Origin: Bigelowiella natans CCMP2755
Lineage: Eukaryota; Protista; Cercozoa
Length of the DNA: 64,000 bases
Direction of reading: 5' to 3'
Assembly (NCBI GenBank): GCA_000320545.1
Contig: ADNK01001791.1
Span: 37,832 to 101,831, forward strand
Part shown: piece by piece, positions 1,703 through 48,858 of the stretch
Layout of the letters: each line of letters opens with the position of its first letter
How positions within the stretch are numbered: the stretch's first letter is position 1
The notes under the pieces: generated by a model
The model's database searches: none
Seen by the model: the letters and a program-made list of their open reading frames with translations, nothing else
What the model was told of the DNA's origin: nothing
Made by a program: the position numbers and the translations under genes

Positions 1703-2802
1703 ATTTGGCTCTAAATAATCGTATTATCATTGGAAATTTTACTTGAGAAATGTGGACGTGGTGAACACATATTCTTAAAAGTGTTCGCCGCTCAAACCAA
1801 CGCTCGGAGTTGTGTATGAAGCCGAAAGTTTAATAGTTCTCACGATGATTCCCCAAACTATTCCATGCCCGTTCGAGAAAATATCATCTCTCAATCAAAA
1901 GAAGAAAGGCTGCTGGCTCCTCCCGGCTTCGCAGGCCAGATGCACAGCGTGACCATACAGGGGAATTTGCCATTATGACTAAATTTCTTTGTAATTATAA
2001 CTTCTCTAGAGTGAATTGTTGGTGGCATCGCTCCTCTTCACTTTTCAAATCCTAGTATCCTGACTGCCCCCGCCCTCTCCGAAATCAAATAGAGGTTTTC
2101 ACCTGTGAATCCGACGACTAGGATAGAGGGGCCTCCTATATGTGTCTCGTAAGAGTTGGAATTGGAGTTTGTGAGAAACTTGCTGCTGCCCCCCACAGCC
2201 TCTTTACGGTTTTAGGTCTTCCCTTTACTCCACGGTGTTTTCGCAGGCTTAGGGACAGGGGGGTGGGGCCGAGCCGATAGGAATATTCATAAGATCTCGT
2301 CCAATGTTCTGTTCTGTTCTCCGAAAATGAAAGCTAATAATACAGAATATGAAGTCATTTTTCTTGTCGTAGTGAATATTTAGGCACAATCTACACCCCT
2401 AAAAATGCGGCAAGCTGGACTTGGCTTTGAAATTCTTGGAAAAGAGAAAATGGTAAAAATGCATTATGAGGGCATCATACGGCAATGTAAAAAATAAGTC
2501 GCAGATATGTTTTCAAAGCCGTTTCAAGTCAGCTCTGAACAGAAATCACCCAGGATTTTATCTTAATGTATCGCTGGCTACTCGGGAAGTCGCAGGGTTC
2601 AGATGTCCCCCCATGTTACAGTCGTACCTCATCTGTGCGAAATCTGCATCGAGATCGAAAATACACCCAATAATATCTAAATACCTTATCGTTGAATGCA
2701 TGAGCCAAAACTCTTTGGCGCAATTTTGGATTTTACATCATCGAGACTGTCCTTACGTAATATGTGGTATTTAGATTTGACTTACTATTTGCACAAATTC
2801 CG

Positions 2803-4525
2803 ATGCGTTCGGAAGATGGCTACCGCGCCCTCCCTCTCCCCGTTGACAGGGAAGTTGTGAGGAGCGGTGCTATCAGGAGACGCAGACGTCGTGGTTGTGT
2901 AAAAATGATGCTTATATGTTGTTGTATTTTGCTTGCATTTCCAAAAGTGCTCTGATGTGATTTGAGGGACGAGTAGTCGTGACTTCGTGCATGCTCGAAA
3001 AGGCGAGTGCATCTGTGCATCCCTACTCAGGCTAATGGAGAATCCCCCCCCCCTCGATTTTCACCAATTAGGATATAAATTCTTTTTGCAATCAGCTCAA
3101 ATAACCTTTGAATCTTTTCCCCCCACCCTTGCCCATCCTAATTGCTTGCGACATCCCAGTAGGGTACCTGTTGCTCGCATGGCTCCTCTGTGGCCTCGCG
3201 GTTTTGCAACAGTGTGATAATTATCATCATCATTGTGCATACGACGATAAGAGTTGCTTTGGCAATGAAGGTATTGAAAATGGGAGAACTAGGTTAAATC
3301 TGCCCGTCCTCTGATGATATGTCGCTCTCCTTAGGAAAGGCATCTAGGACGACTGTGGCAGTTCCAATCTTAGGCGACTCCCTTGCTTCAAGAGCAGGAC
3401 CATATATAACTCCCGCGATAAAGTCATAAAATAAAGCACATAGGAAACACTGCATGTATATAGCTTGTGAGAGTGATGGCCATGCTTTTAGAAACCGTTC
3501 CCGCACAACACATAGCAAGAACACGCTGAATGGGAAGAAAACGTCGAGCTAACGTTCTGTTTTCAAGCGAAGAATCAGCGAGCAACACCCTGTTTGCTTC
3601 AAATTACCATTCATTGGTCTTGCTTTTCTTCTTCTTGTTCTTCTTCTTCTTCTTTGTCTCTTACTGACGGTCTGCAGCATTATTTCAACGCCGCTCCGGG
3701 CTCTTGCACGGTAAGTGGCATTGTAGCATTTCTTGGATTTACTGCTTCATGCAGGAGGATATTTTGCCTTAGTGATCTTCATGGCGCTGCTATGCCATCG
3801 GCAGCAGCCGGCGCCGACTCTTTTATCCGTACTCTGCATTATATTCAAACGTCAGTTGTTGTTCTTGTCAGGTCGTTGGTAGGCCTGGAAGCAGACGATG
3901 CGTCCTCAGATAGAAATAAGAACGACAAGAAGGTGGTGATGACTGGCACTAAAGTCAAGGGGGTGGAGACGCTTGTGTATGCCCAGAAGAACGATTATCT
4001 CGGCTTATTCTACATGAAAGGCATGCCCAGAATAGACTACTATGTAGTACTAGTAAAAGCTTAGAGCACTTAAGGCAAGAAATATCATCGCGAGCTTTTG
4101 TCCGCTTAGACGTTCATATTCTATGTATCTGAACATAATATAACCGATGTTTGGAAGGGTCGTCTTTCTCGATTTTACGTCTATTTTTCTAAAGAAAATG
4201 AGTGTCAAGATTAATTCATTGTTTTCAACGCGACACTGTAGGTTCACCCGTGAAGGGCATTCAAACTGTCATCAGTATTCCGGTCATCCACATGCAATAA
4301 TAGCGATGGCAGAAACTGGGGGGGGGGGGGGGGGGGGGGGGGTTAAATTTTAAAATCTAACTTCGGCTTCTGATGACAGTCAAATATACGTATCCTTTGA
4401 TAGGCCCAGACAAGTTGTAATCGTATTGCTGTTTTGCTGTTATAATGATCAACTTTTAGGGAAGATTTGAGTACAATATTCCTGTGGAGAATATTACCCA
4501 CAGTGGATCGGAGGTACATTCGTGC

Positions 4526-19752: not shown

Positions 19753-21585
<1,833 letters not shown>

Positions 21586-22029
21586 TGTGTGTTATGTATC
21601 GTTAAGCTTTAAAGCTCTTTGCCTGTGCATATGCCTCATGGCATTTCCCCCCTAATGAGCAAATTCGTGCTCGTCGCAATAGAAAATAAAGCCGAATTAG
21701 GAACTATTTGTTTAACTGATGCCCTTCTAGTCGATCTGGGTGTCAGATCCCTGTTGTGTTGCGCGGGAAGTGGGTTTTTGCTGAGATCAGATAATTTTGT
21801 TGCCATCCAGCTCTATCTTGTAGAAGGAAATTCAAACCATTTTTCTCTTGCGTCAAACTCTGTAGGGTAGAGAAGGAAATATTTCTGAATGTCACATTCC
21901 TTGAAATTTGATAGAACGAAGTAATTATTTTTAACCATCAAATGACGATTCAATAAATGGGCGCAAAACCATGGTGTGGATAGTTTCCGTGTTCTTTCAC
22001 CTTAATTTCGTTTCGGATTCGATCGGATA

Positions 22030-22916
22030 GAAAACGACTTGGATGCTGCTCCTGCGACAAGGTGTCCAGTGTCCAATTCATTGCAATGAACAAAACTCAA
22101 CTTGGTGCATCTTGAGCTCAAGTGCCAAACGATTTCAATTTCACAGATCGCTTCATCAATTGTGCATCTCTGGACCTGTTCGGTGCGACATCTGTCGAAA
22201 TGAACATGAGAACATTGTCACTTTGGGAGCCTTTGCTGCCATGTCTTCAAAGGAAAAGCTGTGCCTTGCTCTGGGGGCACGATTTGGTGCACCTTCGACA
22301 GGCAAAGAAATCGACAGGGCTCCGCCGAATCGATGTCCAGCTCAATGATTTTGCTGCTGTGCGCCAATTTGGTGATTTTGTCCTTCGTCTCTGTGCTCCT
22401 AGTTTCTGTCACATGCAAACCCGATCGAGATGACTGATTTCAGCTTGAACTTGGACACACTCCACCTACTAGCCTGTTCCTCTCTAGCTCCCTGGCTCTC
22501 TAGCTCTGATCAACAGATCAACAGGCAGTTCACCTGGCCCCAACTCATTGTCCTTGGCTTCCTCAGTCACAGGACACTGTGTTAGTTTTGTTGCTCAACA
22601 CCAACAGGGTGCTGACAAGTCCTCGCAATGATTTTTGTTGAGGCGCTGCTGCACGCATGTCCAGCTAGCTAGATGTGCACGTCCCATCTGCATGGCCATG
22701 TGGTTCTTGCTCACGTGGTTTTTGCATCACTGGGTCAATGCTTCGTTCATTGTTCATTGTTCAACATGAATCAACCAATTCGTTGACCAATCGCTTTTGT
22801 CCGGTCATCATTTCAAGCAAAAAGTGACACCATTCTTGCAAGTCTGGAAGTGGTGATGAAAGTGCCAGCTCCAGAGATCTAGAGATGCCTGCCTGTGTGA
22901 CTGCATCAAGTCCATT
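22030..22916. other. TpA-erased intergenic tract 1
   Basis: 9 TA in 887 nt by eye: 7 CTAG, 1 CTAC, 1 TTAG. Confidence 0.9.
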
Positions 22917-23247
22917 TATGTTTTAAGTTGCACTTTGTGTGTGCGCCCAGCCCAGGCCGGAGGACTGTGAGCATGTGTGCGTATCGTTGTCTAGTTCTAG
23001 AGTTATGCATCATTCGACAGGCCGTGTCGGCGCCAGAACCATCAGTTGTGCACATGCTCGATGACAAGTGTTTATGCACGATGCTGCTGTGTACGCCACA
23101 TTTAGACAAGTATGCGTTTAAAAAAAGTGCATGCAGATAATTAGATAATTCAGGTTTGTTTGCAGACACAGCGAAATAAATTTGATCATCGATAATTTGC
23201 CGCTCTATTGGCTAAGTTTTGTGCATGTACATATATTATGTATATAA

Positions 23248-23252
<5 letters not shown>

Positions 23253-23302
<50 letters not shown>
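23253..23302. repeat. (TA)n microsatellite
   Basis: Direct reading. Confidence 0.9.
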
Positions 23303-23412: not shown

Positions 23413-24756
23413 TTATATTTCCGGCAACCACCTACCCGTCTTCGTAAATTTAATAGTGACTCGTCTCCTTTTCTCAAACTGAGCCTGAGCGAATGCCTTG
23501 TTCAACTTATTTACTTTCACGTCCCTAGAATCCGCAAGAGAGTAATGGCGTTTGGCTCGCCGAGCTACATGGTTCGAATCTTTACTTTTCGTGTCCCCTT
23601 CTTCACCTTCAGCACTGCTTCTAATCTGTGCCGTTGTCGACATCATCATCACCATGCTCTTGCCAGCACCTTCTCCATCTAATTTGCTATCCTTAGCCTT
23701 TAAGTCCTGCGTCGATGTTTCCGCCCCAGCTGTTCCATATGCTGCATCCTGAGCGACAACACCGTTGGGCGTTGAGCCGTAGGCTCCTGCTGCTGCTGGG
23801 TCATAGTATCCTCCTCCTCCTCCATAAGCAGCAGCAGCCCCATATGGATATGCTGCAGCGGCTGCAGCAGCATACCAGTACTGCTGATATGCAGCAGCAG
23901 CAGCAGCTGCAGCATATCCAGCCCCTGCATTAGCCTGAGGCGAGGCCCATCGTACTCGGAAGCAAGAATTACCGATTTGTCGACCGTTGAGGCCCTGGAT
24001 CGCTCTCTGGGCCATCTCTCTAGTAGCATAAACAACCGTTGCAACCCCCTTTCCAACTGGCATGGCGAGGCTTGTGATTTCGCCATATTCCTCAAATTCG
24101 CTCCGGACTTCAGACTCCGTCAACGTGAGATCGATATTCGTGACCAATAGACCGGAAGTTGATGCTTGTACTGCAGGATCACCACTGCCCCCTGTGCCGT
24201 TCTTGGCCACAGCTACGGAGACTCTCATGGCGCGATTTGATAGGTAAACGCCGGTCATTTCTTGCACTGCGCGGTCGCGCTCCATTTGGTCCGTGAATTT
24301 AATGAATCCATACCCTTTGGATATGTTGGTCGCTGGATCTATAACTACTCGTGCTCCCGAGACCGTGGTATAGCGTTGACGGAAGCACTGCTCTAGCATA
24401 TAGTCTGTCACATCAGGTGCGAGATCTCCAACGAAAATAGAGAATGAGGGACCCACGCCGCTCCCTCCACCCGTCTGAGCCCAGTTCAGCCTATAATATT
24501 TGCCAGGATTGCTAGGGACCGGTTTAGAGTTGAGGGTGGTTAGAACTCTTTCGGCTATATCACGGGAGCAAAACTCCACAAAGCCATAACCAGCGATGTC
24601 CCCTGTTTCTTTATTCCGGATCACTTTGACATTCTCGATCACATTCTTGTAGTCCTCGAACATTCGATAGACGAACGCCTCGTCCATGTGGGCATCAAGG
24701 CCTCCAACCCATAGCGTCTTGACATTTGTAGGCCTCGAGTAGTTCGCTGCCGCCAT
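23413..24756 (-). CDS. Intronless triple-RRM RNA-binding protein, RBP45/RBP47/NAM8/TRNAU1AP-like
   Basis: TLWVGGLDAHMDE..GYGFVEF, SIFVGDLAPDVTD..SKGYGFIKF, third RRM LLVTNID..KGVATVVY; A/Y/Q-rich region. Confidence 0.92.
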   Translation of the reverse strand: MAAANYSRPTNVKTLWVGGLDAHMDEAFVYRMFEDYKNVIENVKVIRNKETGDIAGYGFVEFCSRDIAERVLTTLNSKPVPSNPGKYYRLNWAQTGGGSGVGPSFSIFVGDLAPDVTDYMLEQCFRQRYTTVSGARVVIDPATNISKGYGFIKFTDQMERDRAVQEMTGVYLSNRAMRVSVAVAKNGTGGSGDPAVQASTSGLLVTNIDLTLTESEVRSEFEEYGEITSLAMPVGKGVATVVYATREMAQRAIQGLNGRQIGNSCFRVRWASPQANAGAGYAAAAAAAAYQQYWYAAAAAAAYPYGAAAAYGGGGGYYDPAAAGAYGSTPNGVVAQDAAYGTAGAETSTQDLKAKDSKLDGEGAGKSMVMMMSTTAQIRSSAEGEEGDTKSKDSNHVARRAKRHYSLADSRDVKVNKLNKAFAQAQFEKRRRVTIKFTKTGRWLPEI

Positions 24757-25110
24757 GACCGCGAGGAGGAAGAAGCTTCGGGTTGTCACAGTACCGAAAT
24801 AATAACAAGAGAATGAAAAAAAAGAAAACAATAAAGCGGCTATTGTTAATTTGATGCCCCACCAACAAATGCTTGTAGATCAAGAAATACACCGAATACT
24901 TCGTAAAAGGATGCAATGACAAAGAGAAGTCACAGTCCCAAGTTGGCAAGGCACGAAAGAAAATGGAACCAGGAATGGAGGATGCACCTGGAAAAAAGCA
25001 ATTGGAAAAAAGATGGACGAGGATTTCAAATGAGATCTTCAAGCTCCTCGATGGCTGAAATGCCATTCTTGATTCCTTCTGGTTTCACTAGTTAGACCTC
25101 GCTAAAGTTA

Positions 25111-25664
25111 GTTCGAGGCACTGCGTTTCGCACACTGCAAATGTCTTGCAACGTTTTGGAAGTGCAGTTTGTCTGTGATCATTGTTTCATTGTTTCATTG
25201 TTTCTTTTGGGATCGACTGCATCCAGGCTGGTTCAGCTTGTGCATGCCTTCTCATGGGATGCCACACACAAGTGGCACGCATCTGCATCATCACGGAACA
25301 TGCGCCAGCCCACACATTGAGCTGGATCGACTTGCTAGCTTGTTGTGCGTGTGCAATTGCGCAGTTTTTGTTCGGAAAGCGAGGCGTCACACGCGTGAAC
25401 GGAATCACGCGATGTGCGGGCTGCTGTGTGTTCACAGTCCAGGTTGTCAGGCACAATCACAATTGTGATTTCGCTGCATGACGAGCACAATTTCAAATGC
25501 ACGATGCAACTCAAGTGTGACATGATCGAAATGCCATGGAATTTGCATCAGGTTTGACCCGCATGCACACATGCGTTTCCATTTTGCATTGTGCAAATGA
25601 ACCAATGCAATTGACTGCTGAGACGTGGCATGCATGCATGCGCCCTCATTGCAGCGCAGCTCAC
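25111..25664. other. TpA-erased intergenic tract 2
   Basis: A single TA (in CTAG, 25336) in 554 nt by eye. Confidence 0.9.
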
Positions 25665-25793
25665 TAGCTCAAGCTAGCCAGTCCTATAGTCTAGGGTGCA
25701 CATGCAAACACATGTGATTGATGACTTTGAAATGTGCATGATACCGTTGTCGTTCGATTCTGTTGTTCATGCTGCAGCATGCACCACGACGGG

Positions 25794-26564
25794 TCATGCT
25801 AAATGAATCTGTGGCCATGCAGGATCACTGAAGTATTGAACCTCCCATCTGTAACAACCCAGACCATTTGTTGTATCTTTGTCATAGAAGTTGAACGCAT
25901 AGCAACCGTATGTTGATGAATGTCCTGGCTCTGTTACACGAACCCGCGTGCTATTTGCCTGTGTGGTTATGTCATCATAACTGTCATTGTCGTCATTAGA
26001 TGCCATGATTATGACGATCAAACCTGCACAAGATATGTGTGCCAGTCATCAACTTCTTGTTTAGATGACACCACCATAGTGTAGGTGGATTTTCCGGGAT
26101 TGTCCTGTGAAAACATAACAAAAAAGAGAGTATTTTTTAAAATTCTGAACCACAAAAGAGCGGAACGCTTCACGTGAACGGATGCGATGATTAAAGCATC
26201 AAGTAAGTGACCTTCTCTTCTGGACCTCCCACCGTACAATTAGGGGCTGCACGTGTATTACACACTGCACAGAAGTGGTTTGATGTCGAATGGAATATCC
26301 GACATTCTTTCTTTTGGAGCAGGTTAGGAACCTTATGTGTTAGTTTAGTAATCTTTATTTAATGCAGTTCATGTGTTGATATTTATTTTATTGTCTGACG
26401 ATGACACTACTAATCATACCTCGTTCAAACCAACGACATCTCCAAGAAAGCTAGCTCCAATATCCAAATCCTATTAACAACATTCGGGTCACGCACACGC
26501 ACACACACACACACACACATAAAAATATACGTGAATATTAATACATCTGTATGTAAGTATATTA

Positions 26565-26649
<85 letters not shown>

Positions 26650-26863
26650 TCATGCATTCACTCACTCTCGCCCGCAAATTAGTCACGTAAACCAATTATA
26701 CGTATTGTCCGCCGAAATGAAGATAAAATATGATATTGCTTACGTTCGCATAAAACCATGTGATCTGTTGTGGTATTTCGGGTCGCTTAATCCTCTCACA
26801 CGTCGCTCCACATAAGGCTAATAAAAATACAAAAGCTGCAAGCTCTAGTCTCTTCAGTCCCAT
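25794..26863 (-). CDS. Signal-peptide-bearing VOC (glyoxalase/bleomycin-resistance) family protein, 5 exons
   Basis: Spliced product MGLKRLELAAFVFLLALCGATCE...QQITWFYAN|DLDIGASFLGDVVGLNE|V...ECRIF...FCAVC...|...TMVVSSKQEVDDWHTYLVQ|ANSTRV..P.HSSTYGCYAFNFYD...YRWEVQYFSDPAWP; all introns phase 0 GT-AG; follows the beta-alpha-beta-beta-beta VOC pattern. Confidence 0.7.
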
Positions 26864-27524
26864 ATCCAAACCCTAGGAAGAAGGAAAGAAAGAAAGAAAG
26901 AAAGAAAGAAATATTTGTGCAACCAGATTACAGCACAATCACACCACATCTACACCTAAACATACACAGAATCACAGCATATTCGAGTTCACAATACTCG
27001 CACACGAACACACCGCTACCATATACAAATAGATGTATTCACACATACGTACGCACACAACTTACTTAGTGCATCAAATGCACACACATACACACATACA
27101 CATGTACATGTTCCAAAATACATCCACACGCAATTCTCACTCCCTCACTCATATCTCTCTCTCTCTCTCTCTCTTTTCTCCCTCCCCCCCCCCCCCCCCC
27201 ATACACACACTATTTTGTGCTAAAGCATTTCACCATGCTAAGAAGGCGACTGTCTATTGTAGCCCGTGTGGGCAGGCATGAATTAAGAAAGAGATTATTC
27301 TGTGTAATAAGTGAATGAATGGAACTACACACAACATGTATTTTGAGGGAAAAACATCTAAAAATAAGACCCAAAAAAACTACGACAATTCGTGGTTATT
27401 TTTCCGTTCGAGGCTGTATTACCTTTTTGTTTCGGGTTCTAATAGCGCGTGAAACTACGTAAATAATCCTTTTATTGCAGCACAGGACAAAACAACAACT
27501 ACAACACTTTTAGATCATTTGGCA

Positions 27525-33723: not shown

Positions 33724-34177
33724 GGTTCACCTGCGAAGACAGACATGTTTTGAGAAAGGTCTCCCAGATGGAAAAATTCAGCATCCACAGTGGATATTTA
33801 GATATGATTCGGCTGTAAGCCCCCCAGCTAGCAAACAAAACTCTGATACCTATTTCCCAGTCCTTCGGTTCCCTTCCCTCAAAAGATTGACGGACGAGAT
33901 ATGGGGAGGCGGGATGGAGGTTTGCAGTGTGTTCAACCGTATCAAGCAACTTTCAGATCGAAAGGTGTGAGAGAAAATTGTGCACAATCTCTATTTTATC
34001 CCTATAATTGCTTTATCTTTAAGTCTCTATCACTAAATGTAAGGCTTTAGGGTAAGTCACATATTCTGATGTTGAAAGTCTTCTTCTAAATCCAACCCAA
34101 GTAGAACGACCAAATCTTCTGAAAAACCAAAAGATGGCCTGCGTTTTGGGCAGCTTTTGGGGCAAAATCGCGACGTA

Positions 34178-35635
34178 ATGTCTCGAAAAATCTCTGGTGA
34201 ATCCAGAAAATCTCGCATTCTGATTCCATCGCGACATGGTTGCTGCGTGTTTGTGCGTGTCCAGATGTCCCCTTGTGGTTCTTGCTCATGTGCTCATGTG
34301 GTTTGCATCAATGATTCATTCATTGCTCATTGTTCATTGTTCATTGGCTGAAAATTGTTGTGGTTGTGAGAAAGAAAGACAAATTGCGTGACGATGCATC
34401 CCCCTCTAGCTAGCTAGCTAGCTGGCCCTTGTGTCGCAAGTGTCAGTGTTTGTGCGTCAGTTGCTTCTTCGTCCCGCCTTGATTGCAGTTTTTCACGTTC
34501 ACGTCGTCGAATTTTGTGCACATGGCTAGCTGGTCCCAAACCTTTCTCAAGGTCGAAGGTTTCGCTTGACGACGAACAATCCTGTTCCTTCTGCATCGCT
34601 TTCGTGGTTGCGGTGGTGCTCTCTGGCTCTCGGTGAGCTGCCGCGCAGTGTCGAGTTCCCGGGCAAGGAAACACGTCTTTGAGGATGAACTCATCAAATT
34701 TCTGTCGATAATCCTCCATCTGAATCGTTTGCAGCCACTCGACGTAGCCCGGATCGACCATCACACCGCACACCGCGCAAGCATGGCTGTTGCACGTTCC
34801 TGGACAACAAGAGCACGAGCACATGTCGTTCTGCTCAGCGAGGTCGATTTGATGGCATCCGTGAGCTCGTCGACCGCTTGGATGCGATTTTTCAACAAAC
34901 GTGACACATGCTCATGATGGACAAAGCAATGTGACATGCACGTCACTAGCTAGCTAGATCACATGTGCAACGTGCAGCGTCTGGACGTTGCACGTCCATC
35001 ACATTGTGATCGTTCAGCGTTTGTGACGTTCCCGCCCTTTTCGCCTTTTGCGACTCGTGAGAACGCAAATGAATCGCGCAAACTAGCAAATCACGTTGCG
35101 ACGCGACTTGACTCCTTGCAAGTTCGTTCGTGACCTGCACAAGCGCGCACACGTGGCTTTGCGTATGTTTGCTGCCACACGACACGTGCAGTGGTGCGTG
35201 CACTGCGGCGAGGCGTGACACGAGTTGCGACATGAACACTTCGCTCTGAACTCACGTTGCACGCACATTGCACACACGTGCGCGCGCGTGCAGCCACGTG
35301 TCACGCAACTGCATGGATGTGTAGATGCTCACACATGACGATGATGACATTTTGCTCTTTAGCTCTGTGTCCACACAAGCGATGCGATGCAGCAACAAAA
35401 AAGAAATGCGTCGCAAATTTAGCGTTCATTCGGTTGTGAGCAACTTTCGTGTGTTGTGTCCATTGTTTTCGAACTCTTTGCTTCAAGAAAGATAAGAACG
35501 ATGCAACGCAAGTTGATCTCTCATGTGTGCTTGAGATCAGGTGGACACTCTTTGCACGTCACGCACTCATTGTGACTGCTTCTTGATGTCTTGCTCACGG
35601 AACAGCCAACTTTCTTTCTTTTGATCCACAAAGGG
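34178..35635. other. TpA-erased intergenic tract 3 (largest)
   Basis: 16 TA in 1458 nt by eye: 9 CTAG, 2 GTAG, 2 TTAG, 2 ATAA, 1 GTAT. Confidence 0.9.
34414..34824 (-). pseudogene. Possible decayed coding fragment with a partial SAM-domain-like segment
   Basis: VEWLQTIQMEDYRQKFDEF resembles the SAM helix 1-2 pattern V.EWL..I.M..Y...F; the rest is C/H-rich and does not complete the domain. Confidence 0.3.
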
Positions 35636-35649
35636 TAAGTCAAAGATGG

Positions 35650-36327
35650 TCAAAATCCGCGAATCCCCACCTGAAGTACATGCATGTGAACTGCTGCCAC
35701 TTGTAATGAAACAAATAACCATGTAGTAAAATCTACAAAGGACAGGAAATTCATCGAAAGAAATATTGAATTTAGATTTTCACCATGATCTGGATCGTAT
35801 CCCCCTTTCAAAACGACATGGGATTCTACAAATTCTTTCAGTTCCTTTTCATCTCCAAACTAACCAAACAAGAAAATTGAAAACTTAATCGGAAGACATG
35901 CGTAAAAATCACTTGATTATTGGCCAAATAGAAATACAAACTTCTCCACACTTCTTTCGAAGAACATGTGGCTAGGCAAGGCAATCTCACCGGAAATAAG
36001 TCGCGGAAGTACTCGGTGTAGATATTCTGAAGCTGGATGGCATAGAGAAAGGGATGTAAACGAAAAAGTATAGGTAGATAGCCATGCCAAAATATGCCCA
36101 TTCAAGTGGATACGAGACTAATGAGAGTAGGTGCATTTCATTGTCTGTTGATTTTTCGTTGTGACGTATTCGACTCGATCGCGGCTCGATCTCTCAACCA
36201 CCTCGCCAACCCCCCCCTGCATACACATTTGAACTCTACTCGCCTAAACTTCGGTTTGAAAACACTTCATCATGTCGCACCACAGAACCGATGATCTACT
36301 TCGATTAGATGTACTTGCTACATATGT

Positions 36328-47600: not shown

Positions 47601-47748
47601 CGCAGAGTACTGTGCAAAATACGGTCACGTAGAGCGTTTGCACCTGGAAAAGCAGAAGGAAAAGATTGAAGCGCTACTCAAACTTGCCGGCAAGGAAGAA
47701 ACAACCGAAGCTCCTACTTCCTCCACTACAACACCGTGGCGGTCCTAA
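44698..47748 (+). CDS. Actinin-type actin-binding domain (2 x CH) + coiled coil + C-terminal GAR (Gas2) domain protein, 6 exons
   Basis: TIVRWVNSVL..GIKLMQLMAVLSG..QKLDNVDQAL..HIVDGNEKMVFGLLWAIF (CH1); KEGLLAWVN..NFTSDWSDGSVLCSIL..AEKEFDVPRLLD..DERNILVYVSELY (CH2); heptad region; FLFGTRKIHLFIVTGELHVRVGGGYVSLAEY (GAR). Confidence 0.88.
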
Positions 47749-47769
47749 CTAGCTAACACGCTGGTGCTA

Positions 47770-48411
47770 AATGCAGCTTGTGCGATGATGAGTGTGCACA
47801 AGAACACAGAAGCACTCACCGCTGTGGCATTCATCTCCAGTCACATCACTGTGTTGGTTCATTTGAGCTGTGCTGGCATGCATGCACAATGGCAATGCAT
47901 GCATTTTGTTGAAGCATTGCGAGGCATTGAGATGTGCATCAATGGATCACAAAGACGAATTTGCTTCAGGTGTGGCATGCACAGATTCCACGCCCAGTGC
48001 GATGCACACGTTCACACAGCTAGACAGACGGATGTGTGTGCGTGCACTGTGAACAACAATGCACGTGCACCACGTTCATTTTGCACTCAGTGTGGTCATC
48101 ACTGCACGCACGTGCACGTCGCAGTGACGTGCAATCAAACGTGACGAGCTGCATGTTTGCGATGCGAGCTGTGGCTTGCTCGAAATACAACAATGCCCCA
48201 ATTTTTTTGCGGCGCACAACTGCTCACACACGCCAGCACGGGTGCCAGCATGCACGGGATGCCAGCGCGAGTCGCATCACGCGTTGCAGCCGGCCCGTCT
48301 AGCCGTGTTGCTGCGTGTGCTCGTGTGCTCGACAGGCTTCAAGAGGTTCCCTGTTGATCATCACATGCTGGCATGAGTGCCAAGAGTGTTGCGAGTGCTG
48401 GCTGACACCAG
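47770..48411. other. TpA-erased intergenic tract 4
   Basis: 3 TA in 642 nt by eye: 2 CTAG, 1 ATAC. Confidence 0.9.
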
Positions 48412-48858
48412 TAGTCATCCATCATTGCAATTCGGAACGACGACCTCCAATTTCACCCAAAAAAATAAGTCGTCATCCATAGGATGTCGCTGGTATAAAT
48501 ATGAGGCCATTTTTCAACAATCTCGGTCTCTCTGGAAGGATACGACGACCGCCAGGATCAGTTCTTCCCCCCCTCTTTGCGAATCACTGGTGCGTCATGA
48601 CTATGGGCGCCATACAATCATTTGCTACCCATAAAGCACGATCGGCAGTGTGGCCTCATTCCAACATATTCCACCTTCTGTCTTCGTGCTTGTCATATCA
48701 CTTGAGACTTCACTGTGCATCAATTGTCGCATCGGCGCGTGTTGCTCATGCATACACGGCTGAAAACTTGAACTACTCCAAACCATTAGCTAGTGTTACG
48801 TGTCTCACTAGAAGGTTTTGGTTATAATAGATACGATCAGCGGAAATTTATACCTTCG

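What the first reader, a model, noticed from the sequence alone, without database searches (positions are those of the whole stretch)
22030..22916. TpA-erased tract between the RRM gene and the STE20 kinase promoter
9 TA in 887 nt (7 CTAG, 1 CTAC, 1 TTAG), none in an unprotected context. The first ~370 nt (22030-22399) have no TA at all. The overlapping ORFs lack Tyr completely and are C/H-rich, as expected if TAY codons became TGY or CAY. The frame 22122-22433 reads protein-like and might be a decayed gene fragment.
Basis: partly seen in the sequence, partly recalled or inferred. Interest (0 to 1): 0.8.

Follow-up and report, generated by a model that had tools for sequence, protein, structure and literature searches.

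The report
TpA-erased retroelement relic in Bigelowiella
This 0.9-kb stretch between two genes of the alga Bigelowiella natans is a dead fragment of a repeated mobile element in which nearly every TA has become TG or CA; a 2026 preprint has already shown this TA-specific hypermutation experimentally in the same species, so it is a further example, not a new system.

Summary
Window 22029-22916 has 9 TA (about 46 fewer than background), TA obs/exp 0.15, and CA and TG obs/exp about 1.64. Seven of the 9 TA sit in CTAG, and no TA occurs over 372 nt.

The window is Bigelowiella natans nuclear DNA. The tract is one of four like it in the window.

Its long Tyr-free ORFs are no longer than chance allows once stop codons are depleted. 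It does hold a decayed gene fragment: 22199-22321, continuing after a 2-nt deletion in another frame to 22367, matches the C-terminus of a Tyr-free protein family found only in B. natans. DNA is 80% and 71% identical to a transcript contig, L006, whose copy is also TA-free. So the tract is a 5'-truncated, frameshifted copy of a dispersed repeat, probably a non-LTR retrotransposon; that assignment is inferred, not shown.

Paralogous copies differ by TG-versus-CA and Cys-versus-His discordances, so ancestral TA was converted independently in different copies.

The mechanism, TpA to TpG/CpA hypermutation of foreign DNA, is described in bioRxiv 10.64898/2026.01.13.699255. Three paralogous gene models are in that paper's low-TA lists. 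Other agents of this scan reached the same reading on other DNA of this genome.

What the preprint's text lacks: CTAG is not depleted at all, and the edges are sharp.

The parts
22029..22916 (+). TpA-erased tract: a 5'-truncated, frameshifted relic of a dispersed repeat (probably a non-LTR retrotransposon), sense strand +
   Evidence: TA obs/exp 0.15, CA 1.63, TG 1.65; 9 TA, 7 of them in CTAG. Homologous to the family P0121/P0126/L006.
22199..22321 (+). Remnant of the element's ORF, block 1 (near the C-terminus)
   Evidence: 68% identical over 41 aa to P0126 residues 202-242, E 8e-17. phmmer over 1.84 billion representatives: P0121, E 6.6e-6. tblastn E 2e-11.
22317..22367 (+). ORF remnant, block 2, in another frame after a 2-nt deletion near 22322
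   Evidence: 65% identical over 17 aa to P0126 residues 242-258, colinear with block 1. The deletion shows in the DNA alignment with L006.
22511..22631 (+). Part matching the element downstream of its ORF (3' untranslated part)
   Evidence: 71% DNA identity to L006 3285-3402, where the contig ends. 22520-22552 matches P0129 residues 378-388. The family ORF ends near L006 3228.
22696..22778 (+). About 80 bp shared with the sister tract at 34271-34351
   Evidence: blastn 76% over 74 nt, E 2e-8. Purine/pyrimidine alignment score 40 against a null maximum of 27. Alignment.
22917..23110 (.). Flank rich in TG/CA but with background TA density; unclear whether it belongs to the element
   Evidence: 20-24 TG+CA per 100 nt, but 5 and 3 TA per 100 nt, in unprotected contexts.
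23230..23300 (.). Intact (TA)n microsatellite that marks how local the erasure is
   Evidence: 34 TA per 100 nt, about 310 bp from the tract's edge.
24905..25665 (+). Sister TpA-erased tract, just upstream of the RRM gene; holds a segment of another repeated sequence
   Evidence: TA obs/exp 0.10. 25042-25173 is 61% identical to Bigna1 model 82088 (P0129) residues 167-210, E 2e-10.
34103..35677 (.). Sister TpA-erased tract, upstream of a syntaxin gene
   Evidence: TA obs/exp 0.19; 9 of 18 TA in CTAG, including (CTAG)n arrays. Gene position.
47769..48466 (.). Sister TpA-erased tract, starting about 20 bp after a stop codon
   Evidence: TA obs/exp 0.10, CA 2.05, TG 1.96. The upstream ORF ends at 47748.

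Best explanation
The tract is a dead, 5'-truncated and frameshifted copy of a dispersed repeat of the Bigelowiella natans nuclear genome, most likely the 3' end of a non-LTR retrotransposon. It lies on the + strand between the RRM gene and the STE20-kinase gene.

After this copy's lineage split from its paralogues, its TpA dinucleotides were converted to TpG (A to G on one strand) or CpA (A to G on the other). This is the TpA-specific hypermutation that a 2026 preprint observed directly in integrated viral DNA of this species. The preprint attributes it tentatively to an adenosine deaminase acting on DNA.

Conversion hit both strands about equally and stopped at the tract's edges. TA in the palindrome CTAG is not detectably depleted. 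TA with only one C or G flank (CTAH, DTAG) survived at an intermediate level.

Shown: the composition, the repeat origin and the independent conversions among copies. Inferred: the retrotransposon class, the enzyme, and how the cell recognises the element.
For: - Organism: the RRM gene is 100% identical to jgi/Bigna1/89018.
- Signature and budget: about 46 TA lost and about 55 TG+CA gained; TG 95 and CA 85 on the + strand.
- Published mechanism: 230 of 231 mutations in the two viral regions were A to G or T to C, nearly all at TpA; low-TA coding sequences were enriched in RT and endonuclease-RT Pfams.
- Repeat origin: hits to P0121 and P0126 and 80% and 71% DNA identity to L006.
- The family has several B. 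natans copies: MMETSP transcripts and Bigna1 models 146792, 127844 and 82088. All three models are in the preprint's low-TA tables.
- Family proteins have no Tyr in 313-336 aa. L006's copy has 4 TA in about 1.4 kb: CTAC, CTAG, TTAG, CTAG.
- Independent conversion: 6 TG/CA-discordant dinucleotides between T1 and L006, against 2 for all other adjacent double transitions; 4 Cys/His-discordant columns among paralogues.
- Context hierarchy in the four tracts pooled: unprotected NTAN retained at 0.04, half-protected at 0.13, CTAG at 1.7 times background.
- LINE-like traits: copies are cut at different 5' points (T1, L006, P0127), and in L006 a full-length U6 snRNA abuts the element's 5' end.
Against: - The retrotransposon class is not demonstrated. 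There is no Pfam hit on any family member, no PDB sequence hit, unusable AlphaFold models (pLDDT 41 and 32), no target-site duplication and no clear 3' tail.
- With one DNA paralogue only, the discordances could have arisen in different source lineages before insertion, not in place.
- The ancestral CTAG density is unknown. CTGG/CCAG are also twice background, so some CTAG loss cannot be excluded.
- In the preprint's mutation list, contexts with G 3' of the mutated A do mutate: 20 of 206 by my hand count.
Confidence: 0.85

Rival explanations
1. The element was already TA-free when it inserted. Either editing acted on the RNA or cDNA intermediate during retrotransposition (as APOBEC3 or ADAR act on retroelements), or this copy came from an already erased source copy. 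The tract would then have been born erased, not mutated in place.
For: - The edges coincide with the element's ends. In L006 the last TAs lie inside U6 and the element that starts at 1982 has almost none.
- In the window the left edge is abrupt at 22029, and an intact (TA)n lies about 310 bp from the right edge.
- Every copy seen is TA-free.
Against: - TG and CA are gained equally (95 and 85). Editing of one RNA or cDNA strand would give only one of them.
- Copies carry discordant TG/CA and Cys/His states, so at least part of the conversion was independent per lineage.
- In-place hypermutation of integrated DNA on both strands was observed directly.
Confidence: 0.1
2. The tract is host regulatory or untranslated sequence kept free of TA by selection, for example to avoid TATA-like sites, UA-cleaving RNases or TA-targeting transposons. 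It would not be a product of mutation pressure.
For: All four tracts lie between genes, near gene starts or ends. The target lies about 440 bp upstream of the kinase start codon.
Against: - The tract is a frameshifted fragment of a repeat that is also erased at unrelated loci.
- TA loss is matched by TG+CA gain.
- The mutation process is documented experimentally.
- No RNA family matches in the window.
Confidence: 0.03
3. The TG/CA excess comes from ordinary decay of methylated CpG in a silenced repeat, and the TA deficit is simply the native composition of the element.
For: CG obs/exp is 0.51 in the tract against 0.86 in the window. Several differences in the 80-bp repeat shared with 34271-34351 are CG-versus-TG/CA transitions; there are 7 such sites between T1 and L006.
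Against: - Only about 12 CpG are missing, against about 55 TG+CA gained.
- Two sister tracts have normal or high CpG.
- CpG decay cannot remove TA, produce Tyr-free proteins with Cys/His discordances, or spare CTAG.
Confidence: 0.02

Closest known systems
TpA to TpG/CpA hypermutation of integrated viral and other foreign DNA in Bigelowiella natans (Mettrop et al., bioRxiv 10.64898/2026.01.13.699255, 2026)
   Same: Same organism and same signature: TpA depletion with CpA+TpG gain on both strands. The targets include reverse-transcriptase-bearing elements. Three paralogues of this tract (Bigna1 146792, 127844, 82088) are in that paper's low-TA gene tables.
   Different: This tract is 0.9 kb, below the paper's cluster definition of three consecutive 1-kb windows. 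It carries no gene model and lies in a gene-dense region. The paper's main text has no tri- or tetranucleotide context analysis, so CTAG sparing and the sharp edges are not described there.
Repeat-induced point mutation (RIP) of fungi
   Same: Heavy, dinucleotide-specific transition mutation of repeated or foreign DNA in the genome, acting on both strands and leaving gene-free relics.
   Different: RIP turns C into T (mostly CpA to TpA), so it creates TpA and lowers GC. Here TpA is destroyed and GC rises. RIP needs duplicated sequence and a sexual cycle; here a single-copy viral insert was mutated in clonal lines. No RIP-type enzyme was examined here.
ADAR hyper-editing of repeat-derived double-stranded RNA, and APOBEC3 hypermutation of retroelement cDNA
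   Same: Deaminase-type, context-specific hypermutation aimed at mobile or viral sequences. ADAR favours U 5' of the edited A (as the preprint notes).
   Different: Those act on RNA or on single-stranded cDNA and mark one strand; here both strands of integrated DNA are marked equally. From general knowledge ADAR favours G 3' of the edited A, whereas here G at that position goes with survival.
U6/LINE-1 chimeric retrocopies of mammals (template switching during target-primed reverse transcription)
   Same: In the paralogous contig L006 a full-length U6 snRNA (1884-1981) abuts the 5'-truncated element, the layout of U6/L1 chimeras.
   Different: Seen in one transcript contig that also carries the 3' end of LSU rRNA, so it could be a true U6 gene in an rDNA spacer next to an insertion. 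The target tract itself has no U6.

Membership tests
B. natans TpA-hypermutated DNA (Mettrop et al. 2026) | TpA depletion (paper's cut-off Rho 0.43 or less) | tested here: met
   TA obs/exp 0.15; cut-off.
B. natans TpA-hypermutated DNA (Mettrop et al. 2026) | CpA+TpG enrichment (paper's cut-off Rho 1.52 or more) | tested here: met
   CA 1.63, TG 1.65; about 55 gained against about 46 TA lost.
B. natans TpA-hypermutated DNA (Mettrop et al. 2026) | Foreign or mobile origin of the sequence | tested here: met
   Copy of a dispersed repeat with several B. natans paralogues.
B. natans TpA-hypermutated DNA (Mettrop et al. 2026) | Cluster of at least three consecutive 1-kb windows | tested here: not met
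   The tract is 888 nt. This is the paper's operational filter, not a biological criterion.
B. natans TpA-hypermutated DNA (Mettrop et al. 2026) | New A:T to G:C mutations at TpA at this locus | not testable with these tools
   The only listed mutation on scaffold_42 is a C-to-T at 108270. Only 9 TA remain, and no reads are available.
Non-LTR (LINE-type) retrotransposon | Reverse-transcriptase domain in the family | tested here: inconclusive
   No Pfam hit on P0121, P0124, P0126-P0129 or the L006 ORF; no PDB hit. The resemblance of P0127 and the L006 ORF to the region after the RT catalytic motif rests on my recall only.
Non-LTR (LINE-type) retrotransposon | Copies truncated at different 5' points, sharing the 3' part | tested here: met
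   T1 is securely homologous from about the equivalent of L006 3020; L006's copy starts at 1982; P0127 reaches further 5'.
Non-LTR (LINE-type) retrotransposon | Poly(A) or simple-repeat tail and target-site duplication | tested here: inconclusive
   No flanking duplication found. An A7 run lies near 23121 and a (TA)n at 23230-23300, with no proof that either is the tail.
Non-LTR (LINE-type) retrotransposon | Small-RNA chimeras made by template switching | tested here: inconclusive
   Full-length U6 abuts the element in L006; a chance neighbourhood is not excluded.
Fungal RIP | C-to-T transitions that create TpA | tested here: not met
   The direction is opposite: TA is lost and GC rises.
Protein-coding gene (expressed Tyr-free protein) | An intact ORF longer than chance, with homologues | tested here: not met
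   Longest frame 105 aa against a shuffle mean of 122. The homology is split by a frameshift. No Pfam or PHROG hits. No word-based homologue of frame 22116-22430.

The most novel reading that the evidence does not exclude
CTAG is truly immune to the TpA hypermutation. TA in CTAG stays at or above background density, half-flanked TA (CTAH, DTAG) survives at about 13% and unflanked TA at about 4%.

A merely two- to three-fold lower rate for a 3' G, as the published new mutations suggest, would predict about 27% survival of CTAG. The immunity would therefore be a property of the tetranucleotide itself. It could come from an enzyme unable to act on TAG on either strand, from protective adenine methylation of CTAG, or from context-specific repair of inosine.

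If so, it gives a sequence-level fingerprint for identifying the editing enzyme, and a clock for how long a relic has been exposed.
Probability: 0.4. Interest if true: 0.55.

Novelty: new member of a known kind. Interest (0 to 1): 0.35.

Why it matters
The phenomenon is remarkable: a eukaryote that destroys TpA in foreign DNA, the mirror image of fungal RIP. It has, however, been reported, with direct mutation-accumulation evidence, so this tract does not open a new field.

This locus adds four things:
- Short retroelement relics among ordinary genes are hit as thoroughly as the large viral inserts, well below the preprint's 3-kb detection limit.
- The erasure stops within tens of bases of the element's edge, with an intact (TA)n about 310 bp away. 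That argues for recognition of the element itself, not of a broad chromatin domain.
- Paralogous copies record independent TA-to-TG and TA-to-CA choices.
- CTAG is not detectably depleted, a testable clue to the enzyme's specificity.

There is also a practical point. Erased tracts lack two of the three stop codons, so they yield long spurious ORFs and can mislead gene models.

Tried and rejected
- Pfam and PHROGs on ten frames of the tract and ten frames of the sister tracts: nothing significant.
- Word-based homology search with frame 22116-22430: no hit.
- Two exact-pattern scans of metagenome contigs, one in the tract's centre and one at the 3' coding end of the RRM gene, to find transcripts: both blank. 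The second was a sequence that any RRM transcript would carry, so the collection probably lacks these transcriptomes, and the blank says nothing about transcription of the tract.
- Exact look-ups of the RRM ORF: not on record. The contig of P0125 has no DNA held.
- Rfam on the window: no family.
- Search for relics of (TA)n as mixed in-phase TG/CA runs: not above dinucleotide shuffles (P 0.06). Dropped.
- Test whether the four tracts are copies of one another, including a transition-blind purine/pyrimidine alignment: only the 80-bp T1-T3 segment stands out. A trigger by duplication within the window is not supported.
- Inverted repeats and target-site duplication at the edges: none convincing.
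- AlphaFold on two family alignments: pLDDT 41 and 32, so no fold search was run.
- PDB sequence and profile searches: nothing.
- A simple rule that TAG is never a substrate: rejected as stated, because the preprint's list has 20 of 206 events with a 3' G.

Full report
**Organism and setting.** The RRM gene at 23413-24750 (- strand) is 100% identical to JGI model Bigna1/89018, so the window is nuclear DNA of the chlorarachniophyte Bigelowiella natans. The model's name suggests scaffold 42. The finding lies between the 3' end of that gene and the start of a STE20-type kinase gene (- strand, start codon near 21585).

- 22030-22916 has 9 TA: 7 in CTAG, 1 CTAC and 1 TTAG. The run 22028-22400 without TA is the longest in the window.
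- TA obs/exp is 0.15 (window 0.78), CA 1.63, TG 1.65 (window 1.17 and 1.18) and CG 0.51 (window 0.86).
- Only 0.1% of 888-nt windows have so few TA. Given the tract's own dinucleotide content, 0.56 CTAG are expected and 7 are seen.
- Against the rest of the window, about 46 TA are missing and about 55 TG+CA are gained. Only about 12 CpG are missing, so CpG decay cannot explain the excess.
- TG (95) and CA (85) are balanced on the + strand.
- A segmentation of the window finds three more tracts of the same kind: 24905-25665, 34103-35677 and 47769-48466. Two small low-TA stretches are only microsatellites.

**The mechanism is already published.** A full-text search found the preprint of Mettrop et al. 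(bioRxiv 10.64898/2026.01.13.699255).
- In mutation-accumulation lines of B. natans, two integrated viral regions mutate about 1000 times faster than the rest of the genome.
- Of 231 mutations there, 230 are A to G or T to C, almost all at TpA, giving TpG or CpA.
- The authors also find 324 low-TpA coding sequences enriched in reverse-transcriptase, endonuclease-RT and DDE Pfams, and 124 genomic clusters of at least three 1-kb windows.
- They propose an ADAT2-like adenosine deaminase (Bn78255).
- The main text holds no tri- or tetranucleotide analysis and no mention of CTAG.

**What the tract is.**

ORF length is not evidence. Dinucleotide shuffles of the tract give a longest stop-to-stop frame of 122 aa on average, against 105 observed. 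This follows from the loss of TAA and TAG. All frames inside the tract have no Tyr. Pfam, PHROGs and a word-based homology search gave nothing.

An exhaustive phmmer search with frame 22031-22345 found P0121, an MMETSP protein of 313 aa, at E 6.6e-6. The match was followed up:
- 22199-22321 is 68% identical over 41 aa to P0126 residues 202-242 (E 8e-17).
- After a 2-nt deletion the match continues in the other frame, 22317-22367 against P0126 residues 242-258.
- 22520-22552 matches P0129 residues 378-388.
- At DNA level, 22218-22371 is 80% and 22511-22631 is 71% identical to L006, a 3.4-kb JGI-hosted transcriptome contig from the same sample series that carries this window's syntaxin transcript.

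All named hits to this family come from B. natans or MMETSP transcriptomes: MMETSP transcripts, L006, and Bigna1 models 146792, 127844 and 82088. All three models appear in the preprint's low-TA tables. Family proteins have no Tyr in 313-336 residues.

In L006 the element occupies 1982-3405. It has 4 TA in about 1.4 kb (CTAC, CTAG, TTAG, CTAG), while the 1.9 kb before it has normal TA density.

So the tract is a 5'-truncated, frameshifted copy of a dispersed repeat. It holds the last part of the element's ORF and the sequence downstream of it. The 80 bp it shares with the sister tract at 34271-34351 lies in that downstream part.

**Class of the element.** I read it as a non-LTR retrotransposon, for four reasons:
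- Copies are cut at different 5' points.
- In L006 a full-length U6 snRNA (1884-1981, 88 bits) abuts the element, as in U6/LINE chimeras.
- The preprint finds LINE-type domains among low-TA genes.
- P0127 and the L006 ORF resemble, from my recall, the region that follows the catalytic motif of LINE reverse transcriptases.

None of this is a test. Pfam and PDB searches were blank and AlphaFold models were unusable. No target-site duplication or tail was found. I put this assignment at about 0.6.

**Was the erasure independent per copy?** An ancestral TA converted separately in two copies gives TG in one and CA in the other half of the time. Ordinary divergence rarely produces that double change.
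- Between T1 and L006 there are 6 such discordances in about 300 aligned bases, against 2 for the other seven classes of adjacent double transitions together.
- If half of the independent conversions are discordant, this implies about 12 ancestral TA, or 3.9% of dinucleotides. That is close to the 4.1% the preprint gives for B. natans coding sequences.
- Among paralogous proteins, four columns mix Cys and His and one mixes His and Tyr. The only Tyr left in the L006 copy is encoded at the CTAC site.

With one DNA paralogue, I cannot say whether the conversions came after insertion or in separate source lineages. The balanced TG and CA gain and the published in-place mutations favour action on integrated DNA.

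**Context rule.** The four tracts were pooled (3.9 kb) and scaled against the rest of the window.

| Context of the TA | Retention |
|---|---|
| Unflanked (neither C before nor G after) | 0.04 |
| Half-flanked (CTAH or DTAG) | 0.13 |
| CTAG | 20 sites seen, 11.5 expected |

A model of independent hits on the two strands with no action on TAG predicts 0.20 for the half-flanked class, close to what is seen. Counting each (CTAG)n array once leaves about 14 CTAG sites, still not depleted. TGG and CTG are the least enriched products.

In the preprint's Table S2, by my hand count, the base 3' of the mutated A on scaffold 10 is A in 67 events, C in 52, T in 67 and G in 20. A 3' G is therefore disfavoured about two- to three-fold relative to this window's TA contexts, but not excluded. 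That rate alone would predict about 27% survival of CTAG. CTAG therefore looks more protected than the sum of its two half-sites. The caveats are that the ancestral CTAG density is unknown and that CTGG/CCAG are also twice background.

**Edges.** The left edge is abrupt at 22029. To the right, 22917-23110 is TG/CA-rich but has background TA density, and an intact (TA)n of about 33 units lies at 23230-23300. In L006 the switch falls within about 57 nt of the U6-element junction. Either the cell recognises the element's sequence with fine resolution, or part of the erasure preceded insertion.

**Verdict.** The thing itself is a further example of a process published in 2026. Other follow-up agents of this scan reached the same reading on other DNA of this genome. 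The new points are CTAG's lack of depletion, the sharp edges and the TG/CA discordance test. The class of the element remains an inference.

Noticed in passing
L006:1-3405: One B. natans transcriptome contig carries the 3' end of LSU rRNA (1-430), about 1.4 kb of spacer, a full-length U6 snRNA (1884-1981, 88 bits), and directly after it the TA-erased repeat fragment. It is either a U6/LINE chimera made by template switching, or a U6 gene in the rDNA spacer with an insertion beside it. U6 keeps three TA while the element beside it has almost none.
   Followed up: partly
window 24750-26870 (- strand): JGI model Bigna1/89018 (662 aa) looks like a fusion. Its first 217 or so residues come from exons at 25794-26869 and from the edge of the erased tract, with the tract 24905-25665 treated as an intron. 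The homologue P0002 supports a start at the Met at 24750.
   Followed up: partly
preprint Table S2, scaffold 10: By my hand count, A-to-G at TAG occurs 3 times but its strand mirror, T-to-C at CTA, 17 times. The other mirror pairs are balanced (32/35, 22/30, 34/33). This strand imbalance is limited to the 3'-G class and is unexplained.
   Followed up: no
window 25042-25173: The sister tract upstream of the RRM gene holds a segment 61% identical (44 aa, E 2e-10) to residues 167-210 of Bigna1 model 82088 on another scaffold. That model also contains the T1-like segment, so this tract too derives from repeated DNA.
   Followed up: partly
window 47769-48466: An erased tract begins about 20 bp after the stop codon (47746-47748) of a calponin-homology, coiled-coil gene. 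It may lie in that gene's 3' untranslated region. Transcript evidence could not be obtained.
   Followed up: no
window 34407-34424, 34945-34958, 22665-22672: Short tandem (CTAG)n arrays (4, 3 and 2 units) lie inside the erased tracts. They account for part of the CTAG excess. Their origin is unknown.
   Followed up: no
window 22917-23110: A stretch rich in TG/CA (20-24 per 100 nt) but with background TA density in unprotected contexts, directly right of the erased tract. It may be a less exposed or younger part of the element, or unrelated sequence.
   Followed up: no
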